From positions 145,544 to 209,543 of the IMG/VR virus record IMGVR_UViG_3300042484_002457: 64,000 nt of DNA; one strand, given 5' to 3'. A model generated the notes under the pieces. The model had not been told where the DNA came from and searched no databases. It saw nothing but the letters and a program-made list of their open reading frames with translations. Below are positions 102 through 63,298 of the stretch, piece after piece. How positions within the stretch are numbered: position 1 is the stretch's first letter; the number at the start of each line of letters is the position of its first letter. Both the position numbers and the translations under genes were made by a program.

Positions 102-2366
102 ATGAATCCCACCGCCGAAATTGAACACATTGTTGAACAATCTGTAGCAATTGCTCAAACATTTCAACACGAATATGTCACAACCGAGCACCTGCTGCTG
201 GCCATGGTTCGATATGCACCATTTCGAAAAACACTGGAGAATTTTGGTGTAGAAATTGACATGCTGGATCAAGACCTAACCAGTTATCTGAGTGGGTTAC
301 AAAATCTTGTTAAAGAAAATTCAGATCTAACACCCAAAAAGACCACGGCTCTGGAGCGTATTTTTAATCGTGCCAATGTGCAGGTGATGTTTACCGGGCG
401 TAGACAAATGTCCCTGATTGATGTTTATCTTTCAATCATGGCTGAAGGCCACAGTCACGCACAGTACTATCTCATGAGATACGGTGTGAAGAAAGTGGAA
501 TTTGTGGAGTTCTGGCAAAAGAACTATTCTGCCCAGGCCAGTGCCACTGGCATGAGTGTGAATCAAGCCAATGACATTCTCAACGAGTACTGCGTTGATC
601 TCAGTGGTCGTGCTGCCAAGAACGAACTTGAGCCCATGATTGGTCGAGACACTGAACTACAGGAAATGGTCACTGTGCTGGCACGACGCTTCAAGGCCAA
701 CGTGCTCATGGTAGGCGATCCTGGCGTGGGCAAGACTGCCATCATTGAAGGCCTGGCCCAGGAAATTCAAGCCGGTCGTGTGCCTGAGTTTCTCAAGGGT
801 CACGAAGTATGGAGTTTGGAAATTGGCTCGCTGCTGGCAGGATCAAAGTATCGTGGTGATTTTGAGGAAAAGTTCAAGGCCGTGGTGTCAGCACTGGAAG
901 CCAAGAAAAACTGTATCTTGTTTGTGGACGAAGCGCACACCATGAAGGGTGCTGGTGCAGGATCTAGCTCTAGCCTGGACTTTGCCAACATGCTGAAGCC
1001 GGCTATTACCAAGGGCAGTTTAAAAATCATTGCGTCAACCACCTGGGAAGAGTATTACGAAAGCTTTGAAAAGGATCGTGCCCTGATGCGACGTTTCTAT
1101 CGTCTCAGCATTGACGAACCTGATGCTGCGACCACAGAAAAGATTCTTATTGGACTCAGTCCACGCCTGGAACAGTTCCACAATGTGTTGATTGACACTG
1201 AAGCTATTACTGCTGCTGTGGACTTGGCCAATCGCTACATTCATGATCGCAAGAACCCTGACAAAAGTATTGACTTGATTGATGCTGCTTGTGCTCGGGA
1301 ACGTGTGAAAGATGCAGGCTTGACAACCATCAACAAAGGCATGATTGAAGAACAGCTGAGCCGTGTGACCAGTGTGCCTGTAGACAAGTTACAGAACGAG
1401 CGCAGTGCCAAGATTGTGGAGCTAGAAGGCAATATCAAGCAACGGCTGTATGGACAGGATTCAGCTGTGGACACTGTGCTGGAACGTGTGTACATTAACT
1501 TTGCTGGTATTGGCAACGAGCGACGCCCCATGGCATCATTCCTGTTCTTGGGCCCCACAGGCACAGGCAAAACTGAATTGGCTCGACTGCTGGCCGACAA
1601 CTTGGACATGAAGCTGTTGAAATATGACATGAGCGAGTTCCAAGAGCGTCACAGTGTGAGTGGACTTATTGGTGCTCCCCCAGGTTACGTGGGCTTTGAA
1701 GACGGCAACATCGGCGGCGGCAAGCTGATTGCAGACATCAGCAAGAATCCTTTTTCAATTATCTTGTTTGACGAGATTGAAAAGGCACACCCTGACGTTG
1801 CCAACATCATGCTGCAAATGCTAGACGATGGTGTGCTGACCAGTTCAAATGGCAAGAAAGTCAGCTGCAAGAACACCATTATCATCATGACGTCTAACCT
1901 GGGCGCACGTGATAGTGAAAGCAATGCAATTGGCTTTGGATCACAAGAAAAAACTGGTGAGGACGATCGTGCACTCAAAGAGCACTTCCGCCCCGAACTG
2001 CGAAATCGTATTGATGCTATCTGCAAGTTTGGGCGCCTGGACCAACTGGCCATTAAAAAGATTGTGCTGAAGTTTGTGGCTGAATTGCAAACCAGTCTTG
2101 GCAACAAAAACATACGACTCACTGTGACCGAAGCCATGGTAGAACACTTGGCCGAAAAAGGTTATGATCCCAAGATGGGTGCGAGGCCTCTGGGTCGCAA
2201 GATTGACGAGTTACTGCGTGTGCCACTCAGCAAGCGTATCTTGTTTGATCGCCTGGACAACTGTGATATCACAGCTGACTTGGTGGAAGGTGGGGTCAAG
2301 TTTGATATTGCAACACACGAGACCAGCTTGCTAGACAGTGACGGAATTATTCGTTTCCCAGCATGA
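102..2366 (+). CDS. clpA: ClpA-like ATP-dependent Clp protease ATPase subunit
   Basis: Clp N-domain, two AAA+ modules (GDPGVGKT/FVDEAH; GPTGTGKT/LFDEIEK), IGF loop (NAIGFGS), GARPL motif, no ClpB middle domain. Confidence 0.9.
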   Translation: MNPTAEIEHIVEQSVAIAQTFQHEYVTTEHLLLAMVRYAPFRKTLENFGVEIDMLDQDLTSYLSGLQNLVKENSDLTPKKTTALERIFNRANVQVMFTGRRQMSLIDVYLSIMAEGHSHAQYYLMRYGVKKVEFVEFWQKNYSAQASATGMSVNQANDILNEYCVDLSGRAAKNELEPMIGRDTELQEMVTVLARRFKANVLMVGDPGVGKTAIIEGLAQEIQAGRVPEFLKGHEVWSLEIGSLLAGSKYRGDFEEKFKAVVSALEAKKNCILFVDEAHTMKGAGAGSSSSLDFANMLKPAITKGSLKIIASTTWEEYYESFEKDRALMRRFYRLSIDEPDAATTEKILIGLSPRLEQFHNVLIDTEAITAAVDLANRYIHDRKNPDKSIDLIDAACARERVKDAGLTTINKGMIEEQLSRVTSVPVDKLQNERSAKIVELEGNIKQRLYGQDSAVDTVLERVYINFAGIGNERRPMASFLFLGPTGTGKTELARLLADNLDMKLLKYDMSEFQERHSVSGLIGAPPGYVGFEDGNIGGGKLIADISKNPFSIILFDEIEKAHPDVANIMLQMLDDGVLTSSNGKKVSCKNTIIIMTSNLGARDSESNAIGFGSQEKTGEDDRALKEHFRPELRNRIDAICKFGRLDQLAIKKIVLKFVAELQTSLGNKNIRLTVTEAMVEHLAEKGYDPKMGARPLGRKIDELLRVPLSKRILFDRLDNCDITADLVEGGVKFDIATHETSLLDSDGIIRFPA

Positions 2367-51854: not shown

Positions 51855-52412
51855 ATGAATAGCAGTACTGATCGTCGCACTTTTCAGCTCAAGTCTTACA
51901 TCCAACGATGCAAGGACGATGGCAAAGAACCACAGGAAGAATATATGAAACTGTATCAAGACGAGGCTGACCGCGCCCGGGAAAATGAAGCCAGCGAGGA
52001 GTGGAAAAAATACAATCTAGAACACGACCTGCGTAGTACTAGTTGGATCTGCGACAAAGTCAAGTCACGCGAAGAGTATGCTCAAAACATCTATGCTGCC
52101 TTGTGCAACAACAAATTTGTGAAAAATGATGTTTGGCCCTTGCTCCAGGAACAACGCTGGTCATGCTCGTGGCGCTATGCCGGGGGCATTGTGGCTGACA
52201 TGCTCGAACAAGGTGATTACATTGACTGGTACTGTTCGGGCATCCGCGGCAGCGTCACACAAGAAGATTTCAAGGACATGACCCCTGAACAAATTGAAAA
52301 ACATCAGTGGATGAACAAGCATTTTGTGGGAGAAAGCTATGTTACTGATGAAGTACAAGAAGATCTGTTCAAGCTGGGCTGGATAGTAGTGGACAAGGAC
52401 CAAGACCATTGA
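51855..52412 (+). CDS. hypothetical protein
   Basis: 185 aa; YAQNIYAALCNN, WSCSWRYAGG, DYIDWYCSG. Confidence 0.75.
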   Translation: MNSSTDRRTFQLKSYIQRCKDDGKEPQEEYMKLYQDEADRARENEASEEWKKYNLEHDLRSTSWICDKVKSREEYAQNIYAALCNNKFVKNDVWPLLQEQRWSCSWRYAGGIVADMLEQGDYIDWYCSGIRGSVTQEDFKDMTPEQIEKHQWMNKHFVGESYVTDEVQEDLFKLGWIVVDKDQDH

Positions 52413-53686
52413 CTTATACTCTCAACGACAAAGATCGGTATGGCTACTACACTGTAGGCAACCAAAAAACCTACAGCAAGTTAGAAGCCATTGAATTTTA
52501 CGGCCAAAGCCGGCAGCCTATTCAGTGGCATTACAATACCCAAGTGTATGGCCAATTCAACTGGGGCCAGGACCCCCCGGGCAATTTAGAATTTTGGTAC
52601 CGTGCTAGAGCTGAACAGATTCGCAACGACTATGACTATATTGTGTTGTGGTATTCTGGCGGTGCTGACTCGTCCAATATACTCAATACTTTTGTAAAAA
52701 ACAATATCTTTGTTGATGAAATTGCGCAGTATACCACAGTAGATGGTACTCAAAACAAGCAAGATTACCTCAATGGCGAAATATATGCTACTGCTATACC
52801 ACAGACACAGACACTGTTAGAAAACAATCCGTTGTACAAAAACACAGTGCACAGAGTCATCGACATAACTGACCTCAATGCAAAGTTAATGACTGTAAGC
52901 GACAATCGATGGGACTTTTTCTATCACGTCAATCAATACTACTCATTCAGTGCGTTGAGTCGCAGTTACATAAGAGAAACTGTGTCTGCGTATCGTGAAT
53001 TGATCGAATCGGGCAAAAAAGTTTGTTTTGTATGGGGAGTGGAAAAACCTGATGTGTTCCAACAAAATAATCAATATTATTTACGTTTTGGCGATGGGCA
53101 GGATCATGCCGTAACTGCTCTTGCTCAGCAGCTGAATCGACCAGGAGAATACGATGAATTTTTTTATTGGGCACCAGACATGCCCGCATTACCGGCAAAA
53201 CAAGCTCATATCATATGCAGGTACTTAAACAATCTTACTGCCACAGATGTTGATGGTATTCATGTGCTAGATAATCACGGATACGAGGATACAGTTTACG
53301 GCACCACTTGCCCTGATCCTTATCTAACCAAGCCTTTGATCAAAATCACTAGATCAGGTCGTCCCTATGCTCTAAGCATGCGAGGCTTGCACAGGCTGAT
53401 ATATCCCGACTGGAATCCTAATTTAATTGTTGCCGGCAAACCTCATGGCCATATGTTTGCTCTTAAAGATACCTGGTTGCTTTGCAACTCGGCACCTGAT
53501 TGTGGACAACGATACTACACCAATGGGGTACCGGCACTGCGACAAAAAGTAAAACAAATTGACCCTAATCTTTGGCGGGAATACAAATTTGATCCCAAGC
53601 GAGCTCCATATATCGGCGGGGTGCATCGTTTTTACAATAACTATTGCTTGGGCAACGTAACAGCATTTGATCATGATAAAAATTGA
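52409..53686 (+). CDS. PP-loop family protein (paralog 1)
   Basis: GYYTVG, W.YN..VY, RAEQIRNDYDYIVLWYSGGADS, VDEI, EFFYWAP; TTG start. Confidence 0.7.
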   Translation: MTYTLNDKDRYGYYTVGNQKTYSKLEAIEFYGQSRQPIQWHYNTQVYGQFNWGQDPPGNLEFWYRARAEQIRNDYDYIVLWYSGGADSSNILNTFVKNNIFVDEIAQYTTVDGTQNKQDYLNGEIYATAIPQTQTLLENNPLYKNTVHRVIDITDLNAKLMTVSDNRWDFFYHVNQYYSFSALSRSYIRETVSAYRELIESGKKVCFVWGVEKPDVFQQNNQYYLRFGDGQDHAVTALAQQLNRPGEYDEFFYWAPDMPALPAKQAHIICRYLNNLTATDVDGIHVLDNHGYEDTVYGTTCPDPYLTKPLIKITRSGRPYALSMRGLHRLIYPDWNPNLIVAGKPHGHMFALKDTWLLCNSAPDCGQRYYTNGVPALRQKVKQIDPNLWREYKFDPKRAPYIGGVHRFYNNYCLGNVTAFDHDKN

Positions 53687-54857
53687 AAACAACCCCAAAT
53701 TGGGATTTTACACAGTAGGCCAAGAGAAATTTTTCAGCAAGCCCATGGCCTTGATGGAAGCGACAAAAACCAACCAGTTTCCCAAATGGAACTTTAATGA
53801 CGAAGTGTTTGGCACAATTAACTGGCACGATGAGCCTTCCCCTCATATAAATGAGCTATATCGTATTAGAGCACAACAGTTGCGCAACAAGTACGATTAT
53901 ATTCGTTTAGAGTTTAGTGGTGGCTCAGACTCAACTACTGTGTTGTACAGTTTTGTAAATAACAACATTCACATTGATGAAGTGGTTTTTCGTTATCCCA
54001 AGACTGGTGAAAAAAATGTCAACGATGACCCGTTCAACTACAAATGCGAGAACACTTTAAGTGAGGCAAAGTACGCGGCATTTCCAATTCTGAATTGGTT
54101 AACAACAGCTTCTCCACGTACTAAGATTACGTTGCATGACTATAGCGAAGACATGCTCAATAGTTCTTACGATGAATCTTGGGTATATCGTTCTAAAGAT
54201 TATTTTCAGCCCGGACACAGTTTCAAGCATTCTAAAATAGGGCACCATGATCACAAATTGCAAGCAGACTCAGGACGTAATATTTGTATCTTATATGGAG
54301 TAGACAAACCTAAAATTTGTATCAAGGATAGCAAGTGGTATGCGTACTTCATTGACATTATTGCCAATCACTCAGTAACTGATGCTGGAGAGTACAGCAA
54401 TCTTACTACTGAGTATTTTTATTGGAGTCCGGACTTGCCCGAAATGCTTGTAAAACAAGCCCACGTGCTCCGACGTTGGTTTGATCTCCCAGAGAATCGA
54501 ATGTTGCAGTATGTTTGCAGATGGCCCAACTACAGTTACACTCATCGCAATGCGTATGAATCTATTTTGAAACCGTTGATTTATCCTGACTACGATCCTG
54601 CTACGTTTCAAACCAACAAGGCCTCAAACAGTTTTTACAATGAAATGGATTTTTGGTTTTACCAAAACTTCAAAGAAACTCAGCAGTTTAAGATTTGGCG
54701 TGCTGGACTTGACCACCTAATAAATAGCATTGATCCCAAATATTTCAACTACGAAATGAAACAACCTGTGGGCTTTGTGGGATTTATCAGCCCATTCTAT
54801 TATCTTGGTGATGCTAGTTACACAGACACTGGCATCAACTCACACTTTAAATTCTAA
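53673..54857 (+). CDS. PP-loop family protein (paralog 2)
   Basis: GFYTVG, RAQQLRNKYDYIRLEFSGGSDS, IDEV, EYFYWSP. Confidence 0.7.
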   Translation: MIKIENNPKLGFYTVGQEKFFSKPMALMEATKTNQFPKWNFNDEVFGTINWHDEPSPHINELYRIRAQQLRNKYDYIRLEFSGGSDSTTVLYSFVNNNIHIDEVVFRYPKTGEKNVNDDPFNYKCENTLSEAKYAAFPILNWLTTASPRTKITLHDYSEDMLNSSYDESWVYRSKDYFQPGHSFKHSKIGHHDHKLQADSGRNICILYGVDKPKICIKDSKWYAYFIDIIANHSVTDAGEYSNLTTEYFYWSPDLPEMLVKQAHVLRRWFDLPENRMLQYVCRWPNYSYTHRNAYESILKPLIYPDYDPATFQTNKASNSFYNEMDFWFYQNFKETQQFKIWRAGLDHLINSIDPKYFNYEMKQPVGFVGFISPFYYLGDASYTDTGINSHFKF

Positions 54858-54864
54858 GGACCAT

Positions 54865-55773
54865 ATGAAAAAACTTTTAACTATATTATTATTGACATTG
54901 TCGTTGACTGCACACAGTCGAGAAAACGTTACAATTGCTTATAGTTGGGCCGCAAGCGATCCTGCCGCAAACTTTGATCGTGCGATCATCAACGAAGCCA
55001 ACCGTATTCAAGATCGATTTACATTTATTTTTGAAGCAAAGCCAGGCGCTGGTGGCACAGTTGCCGCAAACTTTGCGTTAACTAATGCAAACACAGTACT
55101 AGCAACCAGTTCTGCATTTTTTATTCGTCCCAATTTTTATCCAAACGACAGTCACGACGTTGGTGCCTTTAGAGAGATTATGCCCAAGTGTGTGGTCCCT
55201 GCATTGATCACCAGTGTAAAATACAATCGTTGGCAAGATGTTCCGCATGATCGTTACTTGACCATTGGAGTGAGTGGCTTGGGCACTACTACTCATTTGA
55301 TTGCTGAACAGTTGCGGTTAAAGTACCCAGATATACAAGTAATTCCATTCAAGAGCACTAGCGAAAGTTTAGTAAATATGCTCGCAGGACAAATTGATTT
55401 GTCAGTTAATTTTATTGGTGACGTTGAAAGTTGGGCTCGAGAAAATCACACAAAGAAAACTGTAAATCTATTAGGTGTAACTGGTACACAAACATTTGAA
55501 AATGTTCCTACTTTAATTAGTCAGGGGTTTAGTCCTAACTTGGCGTTTATGAGCCCGCCGCACCAGTACTTGGTTTCTGCCCGCATAGATCAAGGGCGTT
55601 TTCAAGAATTGCGTAGCATTCTTGCAAAGGCTGCAGATACTCCAAGAGTACGTGCGGCTTATTACATTGATCGTTGCCAACCTATAACTATCAAGGATAC
55701 CCAACTAGACCAATACTACCAAGATCAAATTATCAAGTGGAAAAAATTTAGTGCTGGAGTTAAAATTAATTAA
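54865..55773 (+). CDS. Bug/TctC-family periplasmic solute-binding protein
   Basis: Signal peptide MKKLLTILLLTLSLTAHS; KPGAGGTVAA, GVSGLGTTTHL, IPFKS...MLAGQID. Confidence 0.8.
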   Translation: MKKLLTILLLTLSLTAHSRENVTIAYSWAASDPAANFDRAIINEANRIQDRFTFIFEAKPGAGGTVAANFALTNANTVLATSSAFFIRPNFYPNDSHDVGAFREIMPKCVVPALITSVKYNRWQDVPHDRYLTIGVSGLGTTTHLIAEQLRLKYPDIQVIPFKSTSESLVNMLAGQIDLSVNFIGDVESWARENHTKKTVNLLGVTGTQTFENVPTLISQGFSPNLAFMSPPHQYLVSARIDQGRFQELRSILAKAADTPRVRAAYYIDRCQPITIKDTQLDQYYQDQIIKWKKFSAGVKIN

Positions 55774-56375: not shown

Positions 56376-56461
56376 GCAACGCCAGCAGATGCTGACGTCG
56401 GATTATAAGGACGCATGGGATTGTCCCTTTACTAGATGTCATCTAGAACGCCCACCGTAGC
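56376..56461 (+). promoter_or_regulatory. structured 5' leader of dctP-like gene
   Basis: After ATAAATA; GCAACG/CGTAGC closing stem with CAGCA/TGCTG, GGGA/TCCC, CTAGAT/ATCTAG hairpins. Confidence 0.45.
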
Positions 56462-56497
56462 AGACAACTGCAAGCAAAACTCACACAAGGAAAAAAC

Positions 56498-57448
56498 ATG
56501 CAACCTAAATTAGTAAAATGGGTTTTGGCGCACGAGCCCATTGATATTTTTATCAAAGCCGCCGAAAAATTTACCGAAGTCATTGACAAGTTGGCCCCAG
56601 GTCAACTCAAAATAGAAGTTATGACTCTGAGCGAGTACGCAAATCGATACAACAACGGCAAAAAAATTACCAAGCACGATTTATTGCAATTAATGGAAGA
56701 CGATCTCATTGAGATGAGCCAGACATACAGTTATGTGTTAGGTAACAAATACGCACCTGACATGCATGTTGTAGACATGCCTTTTTTATTTCGTGACCAT
56801 GATCATGCTGCCAACGTATTTGAGGGCAAAATTGGTGCTAAGTTGTTAGACAGCTACGGTCATAATAGCAACTTACAAGGTTTAGCGTTTACATATTCGG
56901 GCGGTTTTAGAAATATTCCGTTTAGCAAAAATGTTGCAACACTAAACGACTTGGCCGGAGCTCGTGTGCGGGTGACTTCCAATCCAATTTGCGAAGCAAT
57001 TTTTGAAAGTATTGGTGCTACTCCGGTTACGTTTGATATTGAAGATTTGGCTGATCGCATGGAAGATGGAACTGTAGAAGGCGGCGAAAGCTCGTGGCCA
57101 CGCATTTATGCTTGCCGTCAAAACGAAGTAAGTAATGTAATTTTTGACACCGAACACAATCTGTTGACCACTAATATCATTGCCAACAAACAATGGATGC
57201 AAGGCTTGCCGGTTGAGTTACAAGCCAAAATTAAACAAGCCGCAATTGAAGCGGCACGCCATGAGCGTGACATTAGTGTTGCAGATGTCGAGCGTGTGGG
57301 ATCTCTTGCTCGTGCTGATGGCATTCGTGTTATCAAGTTTTCTGAAGAAGATCAAACTCACTTTAAGAAAGCAACAGAATCAGTTTACACCAAGTTTGAA
57401 GACTACTTTACACCAGGGTTGGTTGACAGCATTCGCACTTTACAGTAA
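56498..57448 (+). CDS. dctP: TRAP transporter DctP-family solute-binding protein, no signal peptide
   Basis: DMPFLFRD..HA, GFRNI, DLAGARVRV, VEGGES, H.L..NII.ANK.W..LP. Confidence 0.85.
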   Translation: MQPKLVKWVLAHEPIDIFIKAAEKFTEVIDKLAPGQLKIEVMTLSEYANRYNNGKKITKHDLLQLMEDDLIEMSQTYSYVLGNKYAPDMHVVDMPFLFRDHDHAANVFEGKIGAKLLDSYGHNSNLQGLAFTYSGGFRNIPFSKNVATLNDLAGARVRVTSNPICEAIFESIGATPVTFDIEDLADRMEDGTVEGGESSWPRIYACRQNEVSNVIFDTEHNLLTTNIIANKQWMQGLPVELQAKIKQAAIEAARHERDISVADVERVGSLARADGIRVIKFSEEDQTHFKKATESVYTKFEDYFTPGLVDSIRTLQ

Positions 57449-57467
57449 ACTACAGTTTATTGCTGTA

Positions 57468-57725
57468 TGAAGCAAAGAGAAAAGGATCCAAGACCCGGGG
57501 GCAGTTCCCGGCATCTCCACCTAAGTGTATGTTGTATATTTAGGTGGGGATGACATAGATATCGATTGGGTCAAGAGTAACAGAGTGGACAGCTCGGCAA
57601 TGTGAAAGCCGTAGGATTGGGGTCTCCCGGTCGTAGAAGCAAAAAACGTAAATGCAAACGACGAACAGTTCGCTTTAGCCGCCTAAACTCGGCTTAGGGT
57701 AGGAAATACCTCGTAACAGAAACCC
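57468..57725 (+). ncRNA. ssrA: circularly permuted (two-piece) tmRNA, tag ANDEQFALAA
   Basis: T-arm and acceptor 3' strand CATCTCC-ACC (57512-57521) precede 5' strand GGGGATG (57546-57552) with G3.U70; intervening hairpin; resume GCA 57654 to TAA 57686; 5' boundary approximate. Confidence 0.9.
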
Positions 57726-57727
57726 CC

Positions 57728-57755
57728 AAAAAGGGGCTTGGCCCCTTTTTCTTTT
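57728..57755 (+). terminator. intrinsic (bidirectional) terminator
   Basis: AAAAAGGGGC-TTG-GCCCCTTTTT. Confidence 0.85.
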
Positions 57756-57801
57756 TACACCTCTAGTAGAAATAAGTATGTGCCTGTATAGAAATCATCA
57801 A

Positions 57802-58683
57802 ATGAAAAAAATATTATTATCTTTGTTGGCAACGATTTGTGTGTCAGCATCTGCTGACACTGTTCCAACAGATTTTTCAGTCATTGCTCGACTACCAACC
57901 GGAGTATTACCCACACTGTGCCGCAGTGTTTTTGCGGCATACGCTCGGGAATACAAGAGCAACGTCAACATTGTTATCAAGCCCGGAGCTGATGGCATTT
58001 TGGCAGTAGAAGATGTGACGTCGTCGGATAAATTTACTGTGCTCTGTGCTTCATCAACTGAGCTGGTTTTTAACTTTTTTGAATACCCCCAACATGTAAA
58101 GATACACAGCGACCTACAACCGACAAATATTTTATCCACAACCATAGTGTCTTTTACATCTAGTCCCACAAGCAAGTATCAAAATCTAGTTGAATTGATT
58201 GCTGACAAAAAATCTATCACTGTGGGCTTTGCTGGCAGTGCTCACGGGTTCATTGCTAAAAAAATGTTCAACGAAAAACAACTGGTGCTAGTTCCTTTTA
58301 AAGCAGCACAACAGGCAATTCCGTCATTGCTAGACGGAACTCTTGATGTGTATCTGTCTGGCGGCGCATTTGAAGAACTGCACCGAGATGGCAAGCTTAA
58401 ACCAATGGGACATCTGCATGGTCGACCAACATCATTGGGTCCAGCACTGGATCAACATTTTTCCGAGGCATTAAAATTTCCTTCATTTGTTGCTCTGGCA
58501 ATTAGCAAAAAAACATCACCAGATGTTGCAAGAGAATTTAGCCGGCGCATTGCATTGATCATGAAAACACCCGAAGTACAACAAACAATTCAAGATCTCA
58601 ATGGTAACTATACGCCCAACACCCTACAACAGGCCACTGTGTTTGTAGAAAAAATAAAAACTGACGCTAAGAAAAGTTATTGA
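57802..58683 (+). CDS. Bug/TctC-family periplasmic solute-binding protein
   Basis: Signal peptide MKKILLSLLATICVSASA; KPGADGILA, GFAGSAH, VPFKAA...LLDGTLD. Confidence 0.75.
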   Translation: MKKILLSLLATICVSASADTVPTDFSVIARLPTGVLPTLCRSVFAAYAREYKSNVNIVIKPGADGILAVEDVTSSDKFTVLCASSTELVFNFFEYPQHVKIHSDLQPTNILSTTIVSFTSSPTSKYQNLVELIADKKSITVGFAGSAHGFIAKKMFNEKQLVLVPFKAAQQAIPSLLDGTLDVYLSGGAFEELHRDGKLKPMGHLHGRPTSLGPALDQHFSEALKFPSFVALAISKKTSPDVAREFSRRIALIMKTPEVQQTIQDLNGNYTPNTLQQATVFVEKIKTDAKKSY

Positions 58684-59822
58684 TGTTTGATTTTCAAAAT
58701 TTCGAAGACGGACCAAGGCCTACCCGACACGGATTTTACTGTGTAGGGGACAAAAAATTTTACTACAAAGCAAGTGCGTTAGTACATGCATCAACACAAA
58801 AATTGCCAGTGACCTGGGAGTTCAACAATGATGTATTTGCTGAGCAGGTGGCCAAACCAAGGTTGCCAATATCACTGCCAGAGCTGTATCGATTGCGATG
58901 CCAGCAAATAAGAGATCAGTATGACTATGTTATATTGGCCTACAGTGGAGGTGCCGACAGCAATACTATACTCCGGTCATTCCTTGACAACAACGTCAGA
59001 CTGGATGAAGTTTGGTTCGATCAACCGTTTGAGTTTATTGAAAAAAGCAACTATACTCCTACATTATCAACTGATCCTAGAAATCTAGTCAGTGAGTGGT
59101 TTTTTGTTGTCAAGCCAGACTTTGAACAACTGCAAGTATCAAATCCAGAAATAAAAATACACGTATCAGACGCATGTAAAGATCCCAGCATCGAAGACTA
59201 CGAAGATACTTTTCAGCATACATTTGCTTATACCTACAATGGCATCAAACGTTGGAGGTACATGAAAAATTACATTGAAAAATTACAAGAGCGCCACAAG
59301 AAAGTATGTGTTATTTTAGGAACTGACAAGTGCATTACTTTTTATCACCAAGGCAGCTATGGATTTTCTTTTAAGGACAGTCCCACAAATATCAAACACT
59401 CGTTTATTGAATATTTTTACTGGACACCTAGCATGCCAGAAATTGCAGTTCAGCAGGCCTACGAAGTTTGGGATCAGCTGCAACACAATACCAAGTTACT
59501 GGTACAAAAAAAGATGAGTCTCAAAAAAGACCCCAATGATTATATCCGTCGAGATCAGTACGATCAATTTATCAAATCAGTAATCTATCCAACCTGGGAC
59601 CCGAACAGACATCAAGTCGACAAGATGACAATATTTTTAGGCAAAGGCTTCAGTGTATTTGTTGATCGATGGTCGCAAGAACGTTTCTATCAAAGTTGGG
59701 CCAGCAACGTTCAACATACTTTTAAATCCATAGATCCTGCGATGTACACAAACGGGCGAGATCCAACAGATGATTTTAAATCGTTTGCGGTGAACTACAC
59801 GCTTGGTAAAAATTCCACATAA
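58683..59822 (+). CDS. PP-loop family protein (paralog 3)
   Basis: GFYCVG, RCQQIRDQYDYVILAYSGGADS, LDEV, EYFYWTP. Confidence 0.7.
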   Translation: MFDFQNFEDGPRPTRHGFYCVGDKKFYYKASALVHASTQKLPVTWEFNNDVFAEQVAKPRLPISLPELYRLRCQQIRDQYDYVILAYSGGADSNTILRSFLDNNVRLDEVWFDQPFEFIEKSNYTPTLSTDPRNLVSEWFFVVKPDFEQLQVSNPEIKIHVSDACKDPSIEDYEDTFQHTFAYTYNGIKRWRYMKNYIEKLQERHKKVCVILGTDKCITFYHQGSYGFSFKDSPTNIKHSFIEYFYWTPSMPEIAVQQAYEVWDQLQHNTKLLVQKKMSLKKDPNDYIRRDQYDQFIKSVIYPTWDPNRHQVDKMTIFLGKGFSVFVDRWSQERFYQSWASNVQHTFKSIDPAMYTNGRDPTDDFKSFAVNYTLGKNST

Positions 59823-59910: not shown

Positions 59911-60792
59911 ATGAAGAAAATTATAATTACAGCCGCTTTGTTGGCTACTTGCGCCCTGGCTTCTGCTCAGACCACTATGTACGGTCGTGTCAACGCCACT
60001 GTTGACAGCACTAAAACTGGTGCTATTCGTGCAGACAGCATTGTCAATGACATCAGTCACATTGGCTTCAGCGTCAAAGAAGACCTCGGAGGCGGATTGT
60101 CAGCTCGTGCTGTGATCGAAACCTCTGTGGCCACCCAAGACCCCACCACTGGTGGCAACACTCAATTGGGCAACCGCCAAAGCACAGTTGGCTTGGCCAG
60201 CAAGTTAGGCAGCATTGATGTTGGCCGCAACGTGCATGGTTTGTTTACCACAGCTGGACAAGGCGACGCTTTTGGTGCATTGTATGGCAGCATCGCTGGA
60301 GATGTTCATGACCTGCGTGGTCTGCGACTCAGCAACGGCGTGTTCGCTCGTGTCAACGGCCCATTGGGTACTACCTTGGGTGCTGATCGTACCTACACCG
60401 CTGCAGGCACAGAAACCACTGTTTACAGTGCAACTGGCAAATTAGGCCCTGTCAACGCTGGCGTGGCTCAATTTGAGCAAGGTGCCGAGAAATCAACTGT
60501 GGTCAGTGCCAGCACCAAGCTTGGCAACACTGGCGTGTTCTACAGCTACAGTGACAACCAAGGTGCTGTTGCTGCCAGAGGCAACCTAGTGGGCGTGAGC
60601 CAGAAAGTCGGTGCTTACACTGTGAAAGCTAGCTACGGTGATACCAACACAGCCGTCAAGGCTTACAACGTTGGCGCTGAGTATGCTCTCAGCAAGCGCA
60701 CTGACGTATTGGTCAGCTATCGCAACGTTGACAAGACTGGCACTGCCAATGACATCAAGCAAGTTGGCGTAGGTGTTACACATCGCTTCTGA
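59911..60792 (+). CDS. Gram-negative (betaproteobacterial-type) outer-membrane porin
   Basis: Signal peptide; TMYGRV, SHIGFSVKEDLGGGLSA, YALSKRT, C-terminal VGVTHRF. Confidence 0.9.
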   Translation: MKKIIITAALLATCALASAQTTMYGRVNATVDSTKTGAIRADSIVNDISHIGFSVKEDLGGGLSARAVIETSVATQDPTTGGNTQLGNRQSTVGLASKLGSIDVGRNVHGLFTTAGQGDAFGALYGSIAGDVHDLRGLRLSNGVFARVNGPLGTTLGADRTYTAAGTETTVYSATGKLGPVNAGVAQFEQGAEKSTVVSASTKLGNTGVFYSYSDNQGAVAARGNLVGVSQKVGAYTVKASYGDTNTAVKAYNVGAEYALSKRTDVLVSYRNVDKTGTANDIKQVGVGVTHRF

Positions 60793-61341: not shown

Positions 61342-61426
61342 GCTCGAGTGGTGAAATCGGTAGACACAAGAGACTTAAAATCTCTCGCTGCAAGGTGTGC
61401 CGGTTCGATTCCGGCCTCGAGCACCA
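61342..61426 (+). tRNA. tRNA-Leu(TAA)
   Basis: GCTCGAG/CTCGAGC, AGAGA-CTTAAAA-TCTCT, long V arm, CCA. Confidence 0.95.
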
Positions 61427-61431
61427 AACAT

Positions 61432-61508
61432 GCCCTGGTGACGGAATTGGTATACGTGTTGGTCTTAGAAGCCAAATTTTGGGAGTTCGAGTCTCCCCTG
61501 GGGCACCA
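61432..61508 (+). tRNA. tRNA-Leu(TAG), short variable loop
   Basis: GCCCTGG/CTGGGGC, TTGGT-CTTAGAA-GCCAA, V loop ATTTT, CCA. Confidence 0.9.
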
Positions 61509-61517
61509 AGATACTAA

Positions 61518-61723
61518 GATGATACTTAGTAAGATGAGTAGATGGAAACCGACCCGGGAGAGACTTCCCGGGCTTCAGCAGCATCTGAGGTGGCTGACGA
61601 ACGATAGGCAAAGTCGGTCCAGTAGGGGTAAGAAAAGTATCATCAGCGGAAAGAGCTGCTGGAGGACAGAAGTTTGGGCACATCCTCGGAGGGGGTGGTT
61701 AGTCTTAACGCCGTGTAATCCTC
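61518..61723 (+). ncRNA. candidate structured ncRNA within tRNA cluster
   Basis: GATGATACTT/AAGTATCATC, ACCGAC/GTCGGT, CCCGGGA/TCCCGGG helices. Confidence 0.5.
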
Positions 61724-61734
61724 TAAGAATTTAT

Positions 61735-61809
61735 ACTGGGTTCGTCTATCGGTTAGGACAGCTGGTTTTCAACCAGCCAAGACGGGTTCGATTCCCGTAC
61801 CCAGTACCA
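61735..61809 (+). tRNA. tRNA-Glu(TTC)
   Basis: ACTGGGT/ACCCAGT, GCTGG-TTTTCAA-CCAGC, CCA. Confidence 0.9.
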
Positions 61810-61873
61810 AGTTTATGAGTTCGTCTAGAAACCGGTAAATTGTAGTTTGGTCTACAAGCTCGTAATTAATTTT

Positions 61874-61948
61874 GCCATAGTAGTCCTCGGGGAGGGCAAC
61901 GGATTGTCTATCCGTACCAGGTGGGTTCGAGTCCCATCTATGGCGCCA
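61874..61948 (+). tRNA. tRNA-Asp(GTC)
   Basis: GCCATAG/CTATGGC, ACGGA-TTGTCTA-TCCGT, G73, CCA. Confidence 0.9.
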
Positions 61949-61954
61949 ATATAT

Positions 61955-61994
61955 TCGAACTCTGCTAAATACTATGGTATTAGATGGAGTTCGA
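61955..61994 (+). promoter_or_regulatory. SD-sequestering hairpin with late promoter in the loop
   Basis: TCGAACTC 61955-61962 / GAGTTCGA 61987-61994 covers GGAG; TAAATA 61966-61971. Confidence 0.75.
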
Positions 61995-61995
61995 T

Positions 61996-62472
61996 ATGAA
62001 AAAAGTTTGTCCCAAATGCGGCACATTACATGAAAAGAATGGTAATTTTTGCTCAAGAAGTTGTGCAAATTCCAGGTCCTGGACTGTTGATGCAAAGCAG
62101 AAAAAAAGTAAAGCATTGAAGAAATTCATTGCAGAAAACCCAATCTGGGAGGAGCAGCGCCTTGCTGCTATGCCCAAAATGATTGAAAATTTGAAACAAA
62201 CTTTGCTTGAAAAAAACAACCTTAGGTTTTCTGAAGGAAAAATAACAAGCAGAGAAGCCATTAAGAAACAACTAATTGCATTACACGGAGAAATCTGTAG
62301 CGTATGCAGTCTTAGTGCTCATTGGCATGGGCACTTCTTATCGTTGCATGTTGATCATGTTGATGGTAATAGTAAAAATAATATGCCAGATAACGTTAGA
62401 CTACTGTGCCCAAATTGTCATAGTCAGACTGATACGTATGCTGGAAAGAAGCATAGAAAGATTAAGATCTAA
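61996..62472 (+). CDS. HNH endonuclease inserted in tRNA cluster
   Basis: CPKC...FCSRSCAN; CSVC...LHVDHVDGN..NN...NVRLLCPNCH. Confidence 0.9.
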   Translation: MKKVCPKCGTLHEKNGNFCSRSCANSRSWTVDAKQKKSKALKKFIAENPIWEEQRLAAMPKMIENLKQTLLEKNNLRFSEGKITSREAIKKQLIALHGEICSVCSLSAHWHGHFLSLHVDHVDGNSKNNMPDNVRLLCPNCHSQTDTYAGKKHRKIKI

Positions 62473-62562
62473 ATTAGATCCACCAGTTTTATAGGAGAGT
62501 CGCTGCGAAGCGAATTCTTAAACGACCCGTAGAACTCCCGGGCGTCCTGTAGTTAGTATTTT

Positions 62563-62648
62563 GGAGTCGTAGGAAAATTGGTAACCCCAGTGGACTGTAA
62601 ATCCGCCGCCCTAGTGCATTGCTGGTTCAACTCCAGCCGGCTCCACCA
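62563..62648 (+). tRNA. tRNA-Tyr(GTA)
   Basis: GGAGTCG/CGGCTCC, GTGGA-CTGTAAA-TCCGC, long V arm, CCA. Confidence 0.95.
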
Positions 62649-62653
62649 ATTTA

Positions 62654-62729
62654 GGTCTTAAAGTGTTCATGGACGCACGATGGCTTGTCACGCCATAAGA
62701 GTGGGGATCGTTACCCCCTAAGACCGCCA
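62654..62729 (+). tRNA. tRNA-Asp(GTC), second copy
   Basis: GGTCTTA/TAAGACC, ATGGC-TTGTCAC-GCCAT, T-loop ATCGTTA, CCA. Confidence 0.9.
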
Positions 62730-62732
62730 AGT

Positions 62733-62942
62733 TTTGAAAGTGTCAGCAAGTGAAGTCACGTTATGCAGTATTCTTCGAAGGTACTGAGTAATAGAAGGCA
62801 AGCGGGTTCGACTCCCGACCGATCGGAAGATCGGTGTAGCATGGTTACCACGCTGGATGAATCCCAAGTGACGTACCGAACCCCGTCCGGACTTGTTAAA
62901 TCGGGTGAATGGTGCCTATAACAGGGTGGCACTACTTTCAAA
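62733..62942 (+). ncRNA. candidate ~210 nt structured RNA with a T-arm-like element
   Basis: TTTGAAAGT/ACTTTCAAA closing stem, GTCAC/GTGAC, CAGTA/TACTG, CGGG-TTCGACT-CCCG, CCGATC-GGAA-GATCGG. Confidence 0.55.
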
Positions 62943-62951
62943 TTCAACAAT

Positions 62952-63029
62952 GGGCTGTGACTGTGTAAATGGCTAACAGCAACCAGTAACTCTGGTTGGT
63001 CAGCGGTTCGACTCCGCTACAGTCCACCA
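62952..63029 (+). tRNA. non-canonical tRNA: Ala-type acceptor (G3.U70) with AAC anticodon
   Basis: GGGCTGT/ACAGTCC-ACCA; AACCA-GTAACTC-TGGTT; AGCGG-TTCGACT-CCGCT. Confidence 0.75.
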
Positions 63030-63035
63030 ATTTTT

Positions 63036-63110
63036 GTCGCATTAGACTTCTGGTGAGGTCATCACCCTTTCAAGGTGACCAGACGGGATCGTAACCCGTA
63101 TGCGACTCCA
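63036..63110 (+). tRNA. tRNA-Glu(TTC), second copy
   Basis: GTCGCAT/ATGCGAC, TCACC-CTTTCAA-GGTGA, T-loop ATCGTAA, U73, CCA. Confidence 0.9.
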
Positions 63111-63196
63111 TTGATAAACACACTCACAGATCCGCCCGAGTAGTAAGGGAGACAGCGACTAACCGTTGAAGGACTGTTTAAAAGTGTGTTTTTCAA
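63111..63196 (+). ncRNA. candidate small multibranch RNA
   Basis: AAACACACT/AGTGTGTTT closing stem, ACAG/CTGT, TCC/GGA, CCC/GGG, CAGCG/CGTTG. Confidence 0.45.
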
Positions 63197-63197
63197 T

Positions 63198-63298
63198 GGG
63201 AGTGTTGCTAATACTGGCCTAAGGGCGAGATTTATATCCTCGTAAGCACCGTCTAGATAAGGCGGCGAATGTGGGTTCAATTCCCACCACTCCTACCA
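63198..63298 (+). tRNA. non-canonical tRNA with TAT (Ile) anticodon and long variable arm
   Basis: GGGAGTG/CACTCCT-ACCA; CGAG-ATTTATATC-CTCG; V arm CCGTCT/AGGCGG; GTGGG-TTCAATT-CCCAC. Confidence 0.75.

What the first reader, a model, noticed from the sequence alone, without database searches (positions are those of the whole stretch)
57468..57725. Circularly permuted two-piece tmRNA in a phage
Seen: GGATCCAA-GA-CCGGG-GGCAGTT-CCCGG-CATCTCC-ACC first, a hairpin spacer (ACCTAA/TTAGGT), then GGGGATG...TTGGGTC and the tag ORF; G3.U70 present; terminal A of CCA not encoded; very compact. Established: two-piece tmRNAs occur in alphaproteobacteria (non-canonical T-loop), some cyanobacteria and some betaproteobacteria; phage tmRNAs are known mostly as one-piece. 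Inference: captured from, or independently permuted relative to, the host form.
Basis: partly seen in the sequence, partly recalled or inferred. Interest (0 to 1): 0.7.

Follow-up and report, generated by a model that had tools for sequence, protein, structure and literature searches.

The report
Mosaic two-piece tmRNA in lake jumbo phage
The feature is a real, transcribed, circularly permuted (two-piece) ribosome-rescue RNA gene in an uncultured freshwater jumbo phage; such genes are already known in phages, but this copy is a recombinant whose tRNA-like core differs from that of its many phage relatives.

Summary
Window 57461-57727 (+) is a permuted tmRNA gene. It scores 115.7 bits on Rfam tmRNA_permuted and 109.9 bits on beta_tmRNA, both above cut-off. 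ARAGORN misses it.

The order is promoter, acceptor piece, 24-nt hairpin spacer, coding piece with the tag ANDEQFALAA, then terminator.

The record is a jumbo phage: 209.5 kb, about 58% complete, with complete relatives of 320-365 kb.

The gene is not an independent permutation. It belongs to the betaproteobacterial-type lineage and to a large family carried by freshwater jumbo phages. At least 48 IMG/VR contigs share one 26-mer of the common form, and the neighbouring gene order is conserved.

What is unusual is the tRNA-like core. It has T-loop GGCAGUU, a D-loop with UAG, acceptor stem GGGGAUG/CAUCUCC and a short spacer. This differs from the canonical core of its positional orthologues. The gene alternates four times between two parental alleles.

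Lake metatranscriptomes contain exact matches to the coding piece only, and nothing from the neighbouring genes.

No SmpB is encoded, but ClpA and ClpP are.

Two-piece tmRNAs in phages and tmRNAs in huge phages are both published, so novelty is modest: a new variant of a known kind.

The parts
57423..57451 (+). Sigma-70-type promoter: TTGACA, 17-nt gap, TAAACT. It overlaps the end of the upstream DctP gene. The predicted transcription start is about 57458.
   Evidence: 10 of 12 matches. The beta_tmRNA model also aligns its promoter columns here. Relatives have TATAAT at the same place.
57461..57521 (+). Acceptor piece, i.e. the 3' half of the tRNA-like domain. It holds the outer helix strand (57462-57465), the P2a strand GAUCCAA (57485-57491), the T-arm (57495-57511, loop GGCAGUU at 57500-57506), the acceptor 3' strand (57512-57518), discriminator A57519 and CC (57520-57521). 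The terminal A is not encoded.
57522..57545 (+). 24-nt intervening spacer, predicted to be excised. It forms a hairpin that extends the acceptor stem in the precursor.
   Evidence: Spacer lengths elsewhere are 55-92 nt in canonical-core phages and 25-43 nt in beta-type bacteria.
57546..57727 (+). Coding piece. It holds the acceptor 5' strand GGGGAUG (57546-57552), the D-loop analogue ACAUAGAUAUCGA (57553-57565), the P2a strand UUGGGUC (57566-57572), the outer helix strand CAGC (57590-57593), the PK1 hairpin CGGC/GCCG (57595-57611) and a phage-family-specific small hairpin (57619-57628). These are followed by an A-rich leader, the tag frame and 3' hairpins. A possible mature 3' end lies at 57724.
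   Evidence: RNA contigs and the adapter junction at 57724.
57654..57686 (+). Tag reading frame: resume codon GCA through the TAA stop, encoding ANDEQFALAA. The stop codon sits in the loop of hairpin 57677-57694.
57728..57756 (+). Intrinsic terminator: a 10-bp stem (57728-57750) followed by a T tract.
57484..57572 (+). Recombinant core module: P2a, T-arm, acceptor stem, spacer and D-loop. Over the whole module (57484-57572) it is 87/89 identical to L008. Its tRNA-like parts without the spacer (57484-57521 and 57546-57572) are only 41/65 identical to the positional orthologue L109.
102..2366 (+). ClpA-like AAA+ unfoldase (754 aa), a possible downstream partner for degrading tagged proteins. ClpP genes lie outside the window, at G000 83792-84337 and 80919-81428.

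Best explanation
This is a functional ssrA gene of a freshwater jumbo phage.

**Proposed mechanism (inferred from established tmRNA biology unless marked).**
1. It is transcribed from its own promoter as one precursor.
2. Host RNase P cuts 5' of G57546.
3. Host 3' processing plus the CCA-adding enzyme finish the ...ACC end.
4. This removes the 24-nt spacer and leaves two RNAs held together by the acceptor, P2a and outer helices: an acceptor piece of about 62 nt and a coding piece of about 180 nt.
5. Host AlaRS charges it (G3.U70 and A73 are present).
6. With host SmpB and EF-Tu it enters stalled ribosomes. Translation resumes on GCA, appends ANDEQFALAA and terminates at UAA.
7. Tagged proteins go to Clp proteases, possibly the phage's own ClpA/ClpP.

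**Likely benefit.** It keeps ribosomes free late in infection, when host mRNAs are being destroyed and host ssrA expression may fall. It sits beside the phage's tRNA array as part of a translation-support set.

**Evolution.** The gene belongs to the betaproteobacterial-type permuted lineage, is long resident in a clade of lake jumbo phages, and is a patchwork of at least two phage alleles. Its tRNA-like core belongs to the alternative GGCAGUU/UAG elbow class.

**Shown here:** gene anatomy, family membership, helix conservation, mosaicism, and presence of its sequence in RNA libraries.

**Inferred:** processing, charging, SmpB use, tagging and benefit.
For: **Family scores.** Rfam gives 115.7 and 109.9 bits, above the cut-offs. 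The alpha model gives 75.6 bits and the cyano model nothing. Alpha-type bacterial tmRNAs reach at most 72 bits on the beta model.

**Helices.** The three tRNA-like helices are intact in all 13 aligned phage and bacterial homologues, with compensatory changes and an invariant G3.U70. The outer helix and the PK1 hairpin covary.

**Tag.** The tag frame is intact, with synonymous or conservative changes, across the family.

**Transcription signals.** A promoter and a terminator flank the gene.

**RNA.** In four lake/freshwater metatranscriptomes, contigs at 99% identity or more cover only the coding piece (57626-57724, plus 57561-57580 in one run) out of a 2.4-kb stretch. Some of these contigs include genotype-specific positions. 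One contig runs into Illumina adapter after 57724.

**Core class.** The GGCAGUU T-loop always goes with a UAG D-loop in tmRNAs of bacteria that detectably have only that copy, i.e. CPR and Rickettsiales-like lineages. This argues for a working alternative elbow.

**Core conservation.** The core is 100% conserved in three sublineages whose flanks diverged by 15-25%.

**Partners.** No SmpB was found in the record or in four relatives that are at least 92% complete. ClpA-like and ClpP genes are present.

**Relatives.** There are 48 contigs with the common form. DctP-tmRNA gene order is conserved. In the tree the gene lies on the beta side with 99/99 support.
Against: **No direct evidence for function.** There is none for cleavage into two RNAs, for aminoacylation or for tagging.

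**Limits of the RNA data.**
- They are assembler contigs, not reads.
- Many contig ends coincide with strain-variant positions (57646, 57722-3) and so are not RNA ends.
- The acceptor piece and the first ~15 nt of the coding piece are not seen at all. This could be bias against short structured RNA, or it could be real absence.
- Part of the exactly matching stretch (57647-57721) is shared with the L008-type allele.

**Structural deviations.**
- The middle of the P2 stem as modelled for beta tmRNAs does not pair here; both strands are purine-rich.
- A true PK1 pseudoknot could not be established.
- The D-loop (AUAUCGAU) deviates from the usual UUCGAC more than in most class members.
- ARAGORN rejects the gene.

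**Host.** The host and its SmpB are unknown.
Confidence: 0.75

Rival explanations
1. It is a decoy or inhibitor. The phage RNA, with its deviant tRNA-like core, binds host SmpB (and perhaps AlaRS or EF-Tu) to block or hijack host trans-translation rather than to rescue ribosomes. A similar role has been proposed for the tRNA-like-domain-only RNA of mycobacteriophage DS6A.
For: - The core differs from the canonical core of sister phages and of beta-type bacteria in the T-loop, D-loop and acceptor pairs.
- No phage SmpB is present.
- Precedent: DS6A is discussed in PMC4131195 and PMC11915505.
Against: - A decoy needs only the tRNA-like domain. Here the resume codon, the tag frame, the stop-codon hairpin and the C-terminal ALAA degron are conserved across diverging alleles.
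- The part seen in RNA libraries is the mRNA-like part.
- The GGCAGUU/UAG core class occurs in bacteria where it is the working tmRNA.
Confidence: 0.1
2. Its main purpose is targeted proteolysis rather than rescue. The phage uses its tmRNA together with its own ClpA/ClpP to mark and recycle truncated host proteins as an amino-acid supply. Ribosome release would be secondary.
For: - The same genome encodes a ClpA-like unfoldase and ClpP.
- The tag keeps the ALAA end recognised by Clp proteases (the recognition itself is established knowledge from E. coli).
- The idea is raised for phage Melnitz in PMC9004378.
Against: - No evidence links the Clp genes to the tmRNA; they lie about 57 kb and more than 119 kb away.
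- Some relatives have tags ending in LMVA, which would be a poorer Clp degron.
- Mechanistically this is the same machine as the best explanation and differs only in emphasis.
Confidence: 0.1
3. It is a decaying or non-functional copy: a hitch-hiking remnant of a host ssrA, an attachment-site fragment, or a recombination product that no longer works.
For: - ARAGORN rejects it.
- Its structure is mosaic.
- The P2 middle helix of the model is not formed.
Against: - The gene is full-length with both halves, all core helices compensated, an intact tag, a promoter and a terminator.
- The core is identical in three diverging sublineages.
- Its sequence is present in RNA libraries while the neighbouring genes are absent.
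- Attachment-site fragments carry only one end of ssrA.
Confidence: 0.04
4. It is bacterial DNA wrongly binned or assembled into a viral contig, i.e. a host ssrA locus.
For: The flanking genes (DctP, TctC, a porin) look bacterial.
Against: - The same DctP-tmRNA arrangement recurs in independent viral contigs from other samples.
- The porin and TctC fall in large viral protein clusters.
- Complete relatives of 320-365 kb carry the family.
- At least 24 lake metagenomes hold the locus.
- The core 25-mer was found in no bacterial genome among one representative per species.
Confidence: 0.01

Closest known systems
Betaproteobacterial two-piece tmRNA (Rfam RF01850; the third lineage of permuted ssrA)
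   Same: - Same gene order: acceptor piece, spacer, coding piece.
- Same promoter position and the same 5' start (GCUGUAU in the closest bacterial group).
- Spacer hairpin beginning UAAG and ending UUUAG, as in genome G638.
- P2a, T-arm and acceptor helices.
- CGGC/GCCG hairpin.
- ANDExFALAA-type tag and the AACAGAA 3' motif.
- Terminator.
- Score above the family cut-off; groups with the family in the tree.
   Different: - T-loop GGCAGUU instead of UUCGAYU, and a D-loop with UAG instead of UGG.
- An extra segment of about 21-26 nt with a small hairpin after the first hairpin. This segment is shared by most of the aligned phage relatives but by none of the five bacterial genes.
- The middle of P2 is unpaired.
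- It is carried by a phage, and does not nest within either sampled bacterial subgroup.
Canonical-core permuted tmRNA of related freshwater jumbo phages (IMG/VR contigs such as L109, L125, L140, L104, L114)
   Same: - Same phage clade: DNA polymerase 62-72% identical in the complete relatives tested, and neighbouring proteins 55-71% identical in L109, L125 and L140.
- Same locus after a DctP gene in L109, L125 and L140.
- Identity to L109: 5' strand 23/23 and positions 57573-57646 72/74.
- Same tag in L104 and L109.
   Different: - They have the canonical core (UUCGACU T-loop, GGGCCUG/CAGGUCC acceptor, GG D-loop, encoded CCA) and spacers of 55-92 nt or more.
- ARAGORN detects them.
Two-piece ssrA of Methylophilales phage Melnitz and pelagiphages/cyanophages (PMC9004378)
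   Same: A permuted tmRNA encoded by a large lytic myovirus of an aquatic, streamlined host, and proposed to sustain translation or recycle proteins.
   Different: - Melnitz's gene is alpha-type and sits behind a glutamine riboswitch.
- This one is beta-type, with no riboswitch hit in Rfam.
- It comes from fresh water and from a roughly 360-kb jumbo phage clade.
Viral alpha-type permuted tmRNAs L004/L009, and Rickettsiales-like or CPR bacterial tmRNAs with the GGCAGUU T-loop
   Same: - Identical 30-nt T-arm plus acceptor strand, and GGGGAUGA, in L004/L009.
- Same T-loop/D-loop class in all of them.
   Different: - Their scaffold, spacer and tag (ANDNDVAFAVAA) are alpha-type.
- With only about five freely varying positions in that stretch, the identity could be convergence rather than exchange.

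Membership tests
Permuted (two-piece) tmRNA | Gene order is reversed: the T-arm and the acceptor 3' strand with CCA come first, then a spacer, then the acceptor 5' strand, the D-loop analogue and the tag frame. | tested here: met
   RF04321 matches all 213 model positions at 115.7 bits against a cut-off of 47.
Permuted (two-piece) tmRNA | Alanine identity: a 7-bp acceptor stem with G3.U70, discriminator A, and a CCA end. | tested here: met
   GGGGAUG/CAUCUCC with G3.U70, followed by A and CC. The terminal A is not templated, as in bacterial genomes G638 and G504.
Permuted (two-piece) tmRNA | A tag reading frame with an alanine resume codon, an in-frame stop and a hydrophobic C-terminal degron. 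| tested here: met
   GCA...UAA at 57654-57686 encodes ANDEQFALAA. The frame is conserved in relatives.
Permuted (two-piece) tmRNA | The precursor is cleaved into two stable RNAs. | tested here: inconclusive
   RNA-library contigs cover only part of the coding piece. The acceptor piece and the spacer are not seen, and the data are contigs rather than reads.
Permuted (two-piece) tmRNA | Charged by AlaRS, bound by SmpB, and active in trans-translation. | not testable with these tools
   No SmpB was found in the phage or its complete relatives. Function has to be tested at the bench.
Betaproteobacterial-type tmRNA (RF01850) | Score at or above the curated cut-off over the full model, including lineage-specific 5' and 3' parts. 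| tested here: met
   109.9 bits against a cut-off of 84, over positions 1-331. Alpha-type tmRNAs reach at most 72 bits.
Betaproteobacterial-type tmRNA (RF01850) | Consensus tRNA-like core: T-loop UUCGAYU with a GG D-loop. | tested here: not met
   The T-loop is GGCAGUU and the D-loop has UAG. All five bacterial and six phage canonical members aligned in A3 have the consensus.
Betaproteobacterial-type tmRNA (RF01850) | Common descent with bacterial beta-type genes. | tested here: met
   In the tree with the spacer removed, the gene is on the beta side with 99/99 support. The alignment is short and mosaic, so finer placement is unreliable.
Phage-encoded tmRNA | It lies in a bona fide phage genome, not a host fragment. 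| tested here: met
ssrA attachment-site fragment of a temperate phage | Only a 3' (or 5') portion of ssrA, next to an integrase. | tested here: not met
   The gene is full-length with both halves, its own promoter and its own terminator. An integrase was not searched for.

The most novel reading that the evidence does not exclude
Phage populations treat the permuted tmRNA as a set of exchangeable modules: the tRNA-like core, the pre-tag region, and the tag with its 3' end. They move these modules between alleles, between genomic contexts, and possibly between alpha-type and beta-type scaffolds. If so, large aquatic phages would be a reservoir and vector for permuted ssrA genes. They could have seeded or reshaped the permuted tmRNAs of bacterial lineages that are currently thought to have arisen independently.
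Probability: 0.15. Interest if true: 0.7.

Novelty: new variant of a known kind. Interest (0 to 1): 0.4.

Why it matters
**Survey blind spot.** A whole clade of abundant lake jumbo phages carries a beta-type two-piece tmRNA without SmpB. One sublineage is invisible to ARAGORN, the program used in the published phage surveys, so those counts are underestimates.

**A natural experiment.** The clean four-segment mosaic and the two alternative tRNA-like cores on an otherwise near-identical scaffold bear on which parts of tmRNA must match the host's SmpB, AlaRS and EF-Tu. The T-loop/D-loop pairing of GGCAGUU with UAG versus UUCGAYU with UGG can be tested directly by swapping cores.

**A possible combined strategy.** The co-occurrence with phage ClpA and ClpP suggests a phage-borne tag-and-degrade strategy that could be examined.

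None of this overturns current understanding.

Tried and rejected
- **ARAGORN on the window:** no tmRNA. This is a false negative specific to this sublineage.
- **blastn against GenBank phages:** the window's gene gives no match. The canonical relative matches only through a ~65-nt tRNA-like stretch, for example in Stenotrophomonas phages.
- **Sampling Pseudomonadota and one wrong order for beta-type genes:** nothing reached the cut-off. A porin probe was needed to find the right order.
- **Host genus from DctP identity:** about 25% identity to all candidates, so uninformative.
- **Host genus from the protein atlas:** the porin and TctC fall in viral clusters, and only phylum-level taxa are given.
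- **A proposed 3' outer helix (GGG 57697-99 with CCC 57723-25):** not conserved in relatives, so dropped.
- **A true PK1 pseudoknot:** could not be supported.
- **Direct alpha-to-beta core transfer:** first suggested by the identical 30-mer in L004/L009. It was downgraded because that stretch has few free positions within the GGCAGUU class and the D-loops differ (19/27).
- **Contig ends at 57647 and 57721 as RNA ends:** rejected. They coincide with differences from the L008 allele.
- **A phage CCA-adding enzyme (PF01743):** none found.
- **Older tmRNA papers (PMC516066, PMC16621):** not held.

Full report
**1. What is there**

Rfam matches the whole tmRNA_permuted model (RF04321) at 115.7 bits against a cut-off of 47. 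It matches the whole betaproteobacterial model (RF01850) at 109.9 bits against a cut-off of 84. The alphaproteobacterial model gives 75.6 bits and the cyanobacterial model gives nothing. ARAGORN reports eight tRNAs in the window but no tmRNA.

The anatomy runs as follows.
- Promoter TTGACA-17-TAAACT at 57423-57451, and a strong terminator at 57728-57750.
- Acceptor piece, 57461-57521. It contains T-arm CCGGG/GGCAGUU/CCCGG, acceptor strand CAUCUCC, discriminator A and CC. The terminal A is not templated.
- A 24-nt spacer, 57522-57545. In the precursor it prolongs the acceptor stem into an 18-bp hairpin.
- Coding piece, starting at G57546. It contains GGGGAUG (G3.U70), a D-loop analogue and UUGGGUC, which pairs with GAUCCAA.
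- Further into the coding piece lie two small hairpins, an A-rich leader, the tag frame at 57654-57686 (ANDEQFALAA) and a hairpin that presents the stop codon.
- A two-strand fold reproduces the intermolecular acceptor stem, P2a and the T-arm.

**2. It is a phage**

- The window is the last 64 kb of a 209.5-kb IMG/VR virus record that CheckV estimates at 58% complete.
- It encodes a T4-type DNA polymerase and an exonuclease among many unknown ORFs.
- The polymerase is 44-52% identical to those of cultured jumbo myoviruses such as Sinorhizobium phage Phosso, Agrobacterium phage Atu_ph07, Yersinia phage fHe-Yen9-04 and Cronobacter phage GAP32.
- The polymerase is 62-72% identical to that of uncultured phage genomes of 320-365 kb. 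Four of these are at least 92% complete and one has direct terminal repeats.
- At least 24 lake-water metagenome runs hold the locus.

**3. Family and relatives**

Exact-pattern scans of IMG/VR gave two groups.
- Eight contigs carry the window's T-arm plus acceptor 27-mer.
- 48 contigs carry a 26-mer from a related tmRNA with a canonical D-loop.

All 14 of the second group that I scanned have a permuted tmRNA. Most of them reach the beta cut-off, and several lie beside large tRNA arrays.

Five genuine bacterial beta-type genes were recovered by sampling Burkholderiales-type genomes: 3 of 151 in the order, and 3 of 41 in one family. In that family, all three carriers have small genomes of 1.7-2.3 Mb.

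Alignments show that the phage genes share the following with the bacterial ones:
- the order of parts;
- the 5' start, and the spacer hairpin (UAAG...UUUAG in G638);
- the three tRNA-like helices and the CGGC/GCCG hairpin;
- the tag type (bacterial tags are ANDENFALAA, ANDESYALAA and ANDEHFAIAA);
- the AACAGAA motif.

A tree with the spacer removed separates an alpha clade from a beta clade with 99/99 support. The beta clade contains all the phage genes of this family. The permutation is therefore the beta-lineage one, not a new event.

The phage genes do not nest inside either sampled bacterial subgroup. Most of the aligned phage relatives also share an extra segment of about 21-26 nt with a small hairpin (57619-57628; G-C, G.U and A-U variants in alignment A3). 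None of the five bacterial genes has it.

**4. What is special about this copy**

The common phage form has a canonical core: T-loop UUCGACU, acceptor GGGCCUG/CAGGUCC, a D-loop with GG, an encoded CCA, and a spacer of 55-92 nt. The window, L008 and the L002 group instead have GGCAGUU, GGGGAUG/CAUCUCC, a D-loop with UAG, and a 24-nt spacer.

Every helix stays fully paired. Relative to the common form, 4 of 7 P2a pairs, 1 T-arm pair and 2 acceptor pairs differ, and all are compensated. G3.U70 is invariant.

Contigs L109, L125 and L140 have the same DctP gene (55% amino-acid identity) directly upstream of their tmRNA and a PP-loop paralogue at 71%. They are therefore positional orthologues. L109 comes from the same sample as L005, which is the window's genotype.

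Comparing the window with L109 and with L008 gives an alternating pattern:

| Segment | vs L109 | vs L008 |
|---|---|---|
| 57461-57483 | 23/23 | 18/23 |
| 57484-57521 | 24/38 | 37/38 |
| spacer 57522-57545 | 16/24 | 23/24 |
| 57546-57572 | 17/27 | 27/27 |
| 57573-57646 | 72/74 | 60/74 |
| 57647-57722 | 65/76 | 76/76 |

In L008 and L002 the tmRNA sits next to a gene whose homologue in this phage lies about 127 kb away. Only the tmRNA itself is alike at nucleotide level between those contigs and the window. The gene is thus a recombinant of at least two alleles that circulate among related phages.

**5. Is the odd core functional?**

I scanned one genome per bacterial species for the T-loop plus acceptor pattern. 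It matched 59 genomes:
- Saccharibacteria, Gracilibacteria and other CPR lineages, plus Elusimicrobia (the ones scanned have one-piece tmRNAs);
- Rickettsiales-, Holosporaceae- and other alphaproteobacterial MAGs (alpha-type two-piece);
- no betaproteobacterium.

The exact 25-mer of the window occurs only in viral contigs.

In every tmRNA with this T-loop that I could parse, the D-loop reads ...UAG..UCGAC/U where canonical ones read ...UGG..UCGAC. This is a co-varying T-loop/D-loop class used by bacteria as their working tmRNA. The core is also identical in three phage sublineages whose flanks differ by 15-25%. Together these argue for function rather than decay.

Two alpha-type viral tmRNAs (L004 and L009, from two samples) share the identical 30-nt T-arm plus acceptor strand. 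Their flanking genes are homologous to those around the common phage form. Because few positions vary freely in that stretch and the D-loops differ, I treat exchange between alpha-type and beta-type genes as possible, not shown.

**6. Expression**

Four independent freshwater/lake metatranscriptomes were laid on 56400-58800 at 99% identity or more. Contigs lie only on 57626-57724, plus 57561-57580 in one run. Nothing lies on the DctP or TctC genes, the acceptor piece or the spacer.

Several pieces include positions that distinguish the window's allele (A57646, CC57723-4). One contig ends at 57724 and continues into Illumina adapter. That suggests a defined 3' end four bases before the terminator stem.

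Caveats:
- The data are assembler contigs.
- Ends at 57647 and 57721 are branch points with the L008 allele.
- Short structured RNAs are under-represented.

At 90% identity, related alleles are far deeper, reaching depth 511 in one run. This shows that the gene's RNA is present and far more abundant than the neighbouring mRNAs. It is compatible with processing into two pieces but does not prove it.

**7. Partners**

- No SmpB (PF01668) is found in the record or in four near-complete relatives.
- No CCA-adding enzyme is found.
- So host SmpB, AlaRS, EF-Tu, RNase P and CCA-adding enzyme must serve.
- The phage does encode a ClpA-like unfoldase (window 102-2366), a ClpP at 266 bits and a second ClpP-like protein.

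**8. Comparison with the literature**

- Two-piece tmRNAs in phages are established. Melnitz has an alpha-type one, and 53 of 133 unique phage tmRNA structures were called two-piece by ARAGORN, mostly in marine phages (PMC9004378).
- That paper's table lists no phage of a freshwater host or of a betaproteobacterial host other than Melnitz.
- Huge phages with tmRNA and SmpB are reported (PMC7162821).
- The 2025 tmRNA database counts 79 phage sequences from RefSeq viruses (PMC11915505).
- GenBank phages hold no full-length relative of this family.

**Verdict**

The kind is known. New here are the beta-type family in lake jumbo phages, the variant-core sublineage that ARAGORN misses, and its mosaic origin.

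Noticed in passing
window 102-2366 (+); G000 83792-84337 and 80919-81428: The phage encodes a ClpA-like AAA+ unfoldase (Clp_N, two AAA modules, ClpB_D2-small; 754 aa) and ClpP (266 bits), plus a second ClpP-like protein (97 bits). This may be its own protease for ssrA-tagged proteins.
   Followed up: partly
window 52409-53686, 53667-54857, 58680-59822 (+): Three paralogous ORFs of 380-425 aa carry an SGGADS/SGGSDS PP-loop-like motif and have no Pfam hit; the one scanned against PHROGs (52409-53686) had no hit there either. They are interleaved with solute-binding-protein genes and are conserved in relatives (up to 71% identity in L109, L125 and L140).
   Followed up: partly
window 54775-55773, 56498-57448, 57778-58683, 59911-60792 (+): The phage carries two TctC (Bug-family) proteins, a DctP solute-binding protein and a Porin_4 outer-membrane porin. 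The atlas places the porin and the one TctC protein queried (57778-58683) in large clusters that are almost entirely viral, so these are established phage gene families rather than recent host pick-ups.
   Followed up: partly
window 61342-63295 (+): There is a tRNA cluster downstream of the tmRNA. Rfam reports a 98-nt tRNA match at 63198-63295 that ARAGORN does not call. ARAGORN calls tRNA-Glu at 63036-63110, which is not in Rfam's gathering list.
   Followed up: no
L100 5584-6005, L107 1533-1982, L117 720-1177; L104 spacer (alignment A3 columns ~100-190): Some relatives have permuted tmRNA matches of 420-460 nt, implying very long spacers. The L104 spacer contains a T-arm-like GGTTCGATTCC, so something (a tRNA-like element or another insert) may sit inside the spacer.
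   Followed up: no
L010-L068, L092-L096: There is a co-varying tmRNA elbow class: T-loop GGCAGUU always goes with a D-loop reading UAG instead of UGG. It recurs in Saccharibacteria, Gracilibacteria, Elusimicrobia, Rickettsiales-like alphaproteobacteria and several viral tmRNAs.
   Followed up: partly
L026 5873-6373: A MAG labelled Bdellovibrionales carries an alpha-type permuted tmRNA (210.7 bits) with a spacer of about 160 nt. This could be mis-binning, transfer, or a wider range of the alpha type.
   Followed up: no
L008 107-1520; L002/L003 equivalents; G000 75928-77019: In the L008- and L002-type phages the tmRNA lies next to a gene (88-94% identical) whose homologue in this phage is about 127 kb from the tmRNA. 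The tmRNA therefore occupies different genomic contexts in related phages.
   Followed up: partly
L114, L118 tag frames: Some family members encode tags ending in LMVA (ANDEQFLMVA, ANDSQFLMVA) instead of ALAA, followed by two stop codons according to ARAGORN. This may be an altered degron.
   Followed up: no
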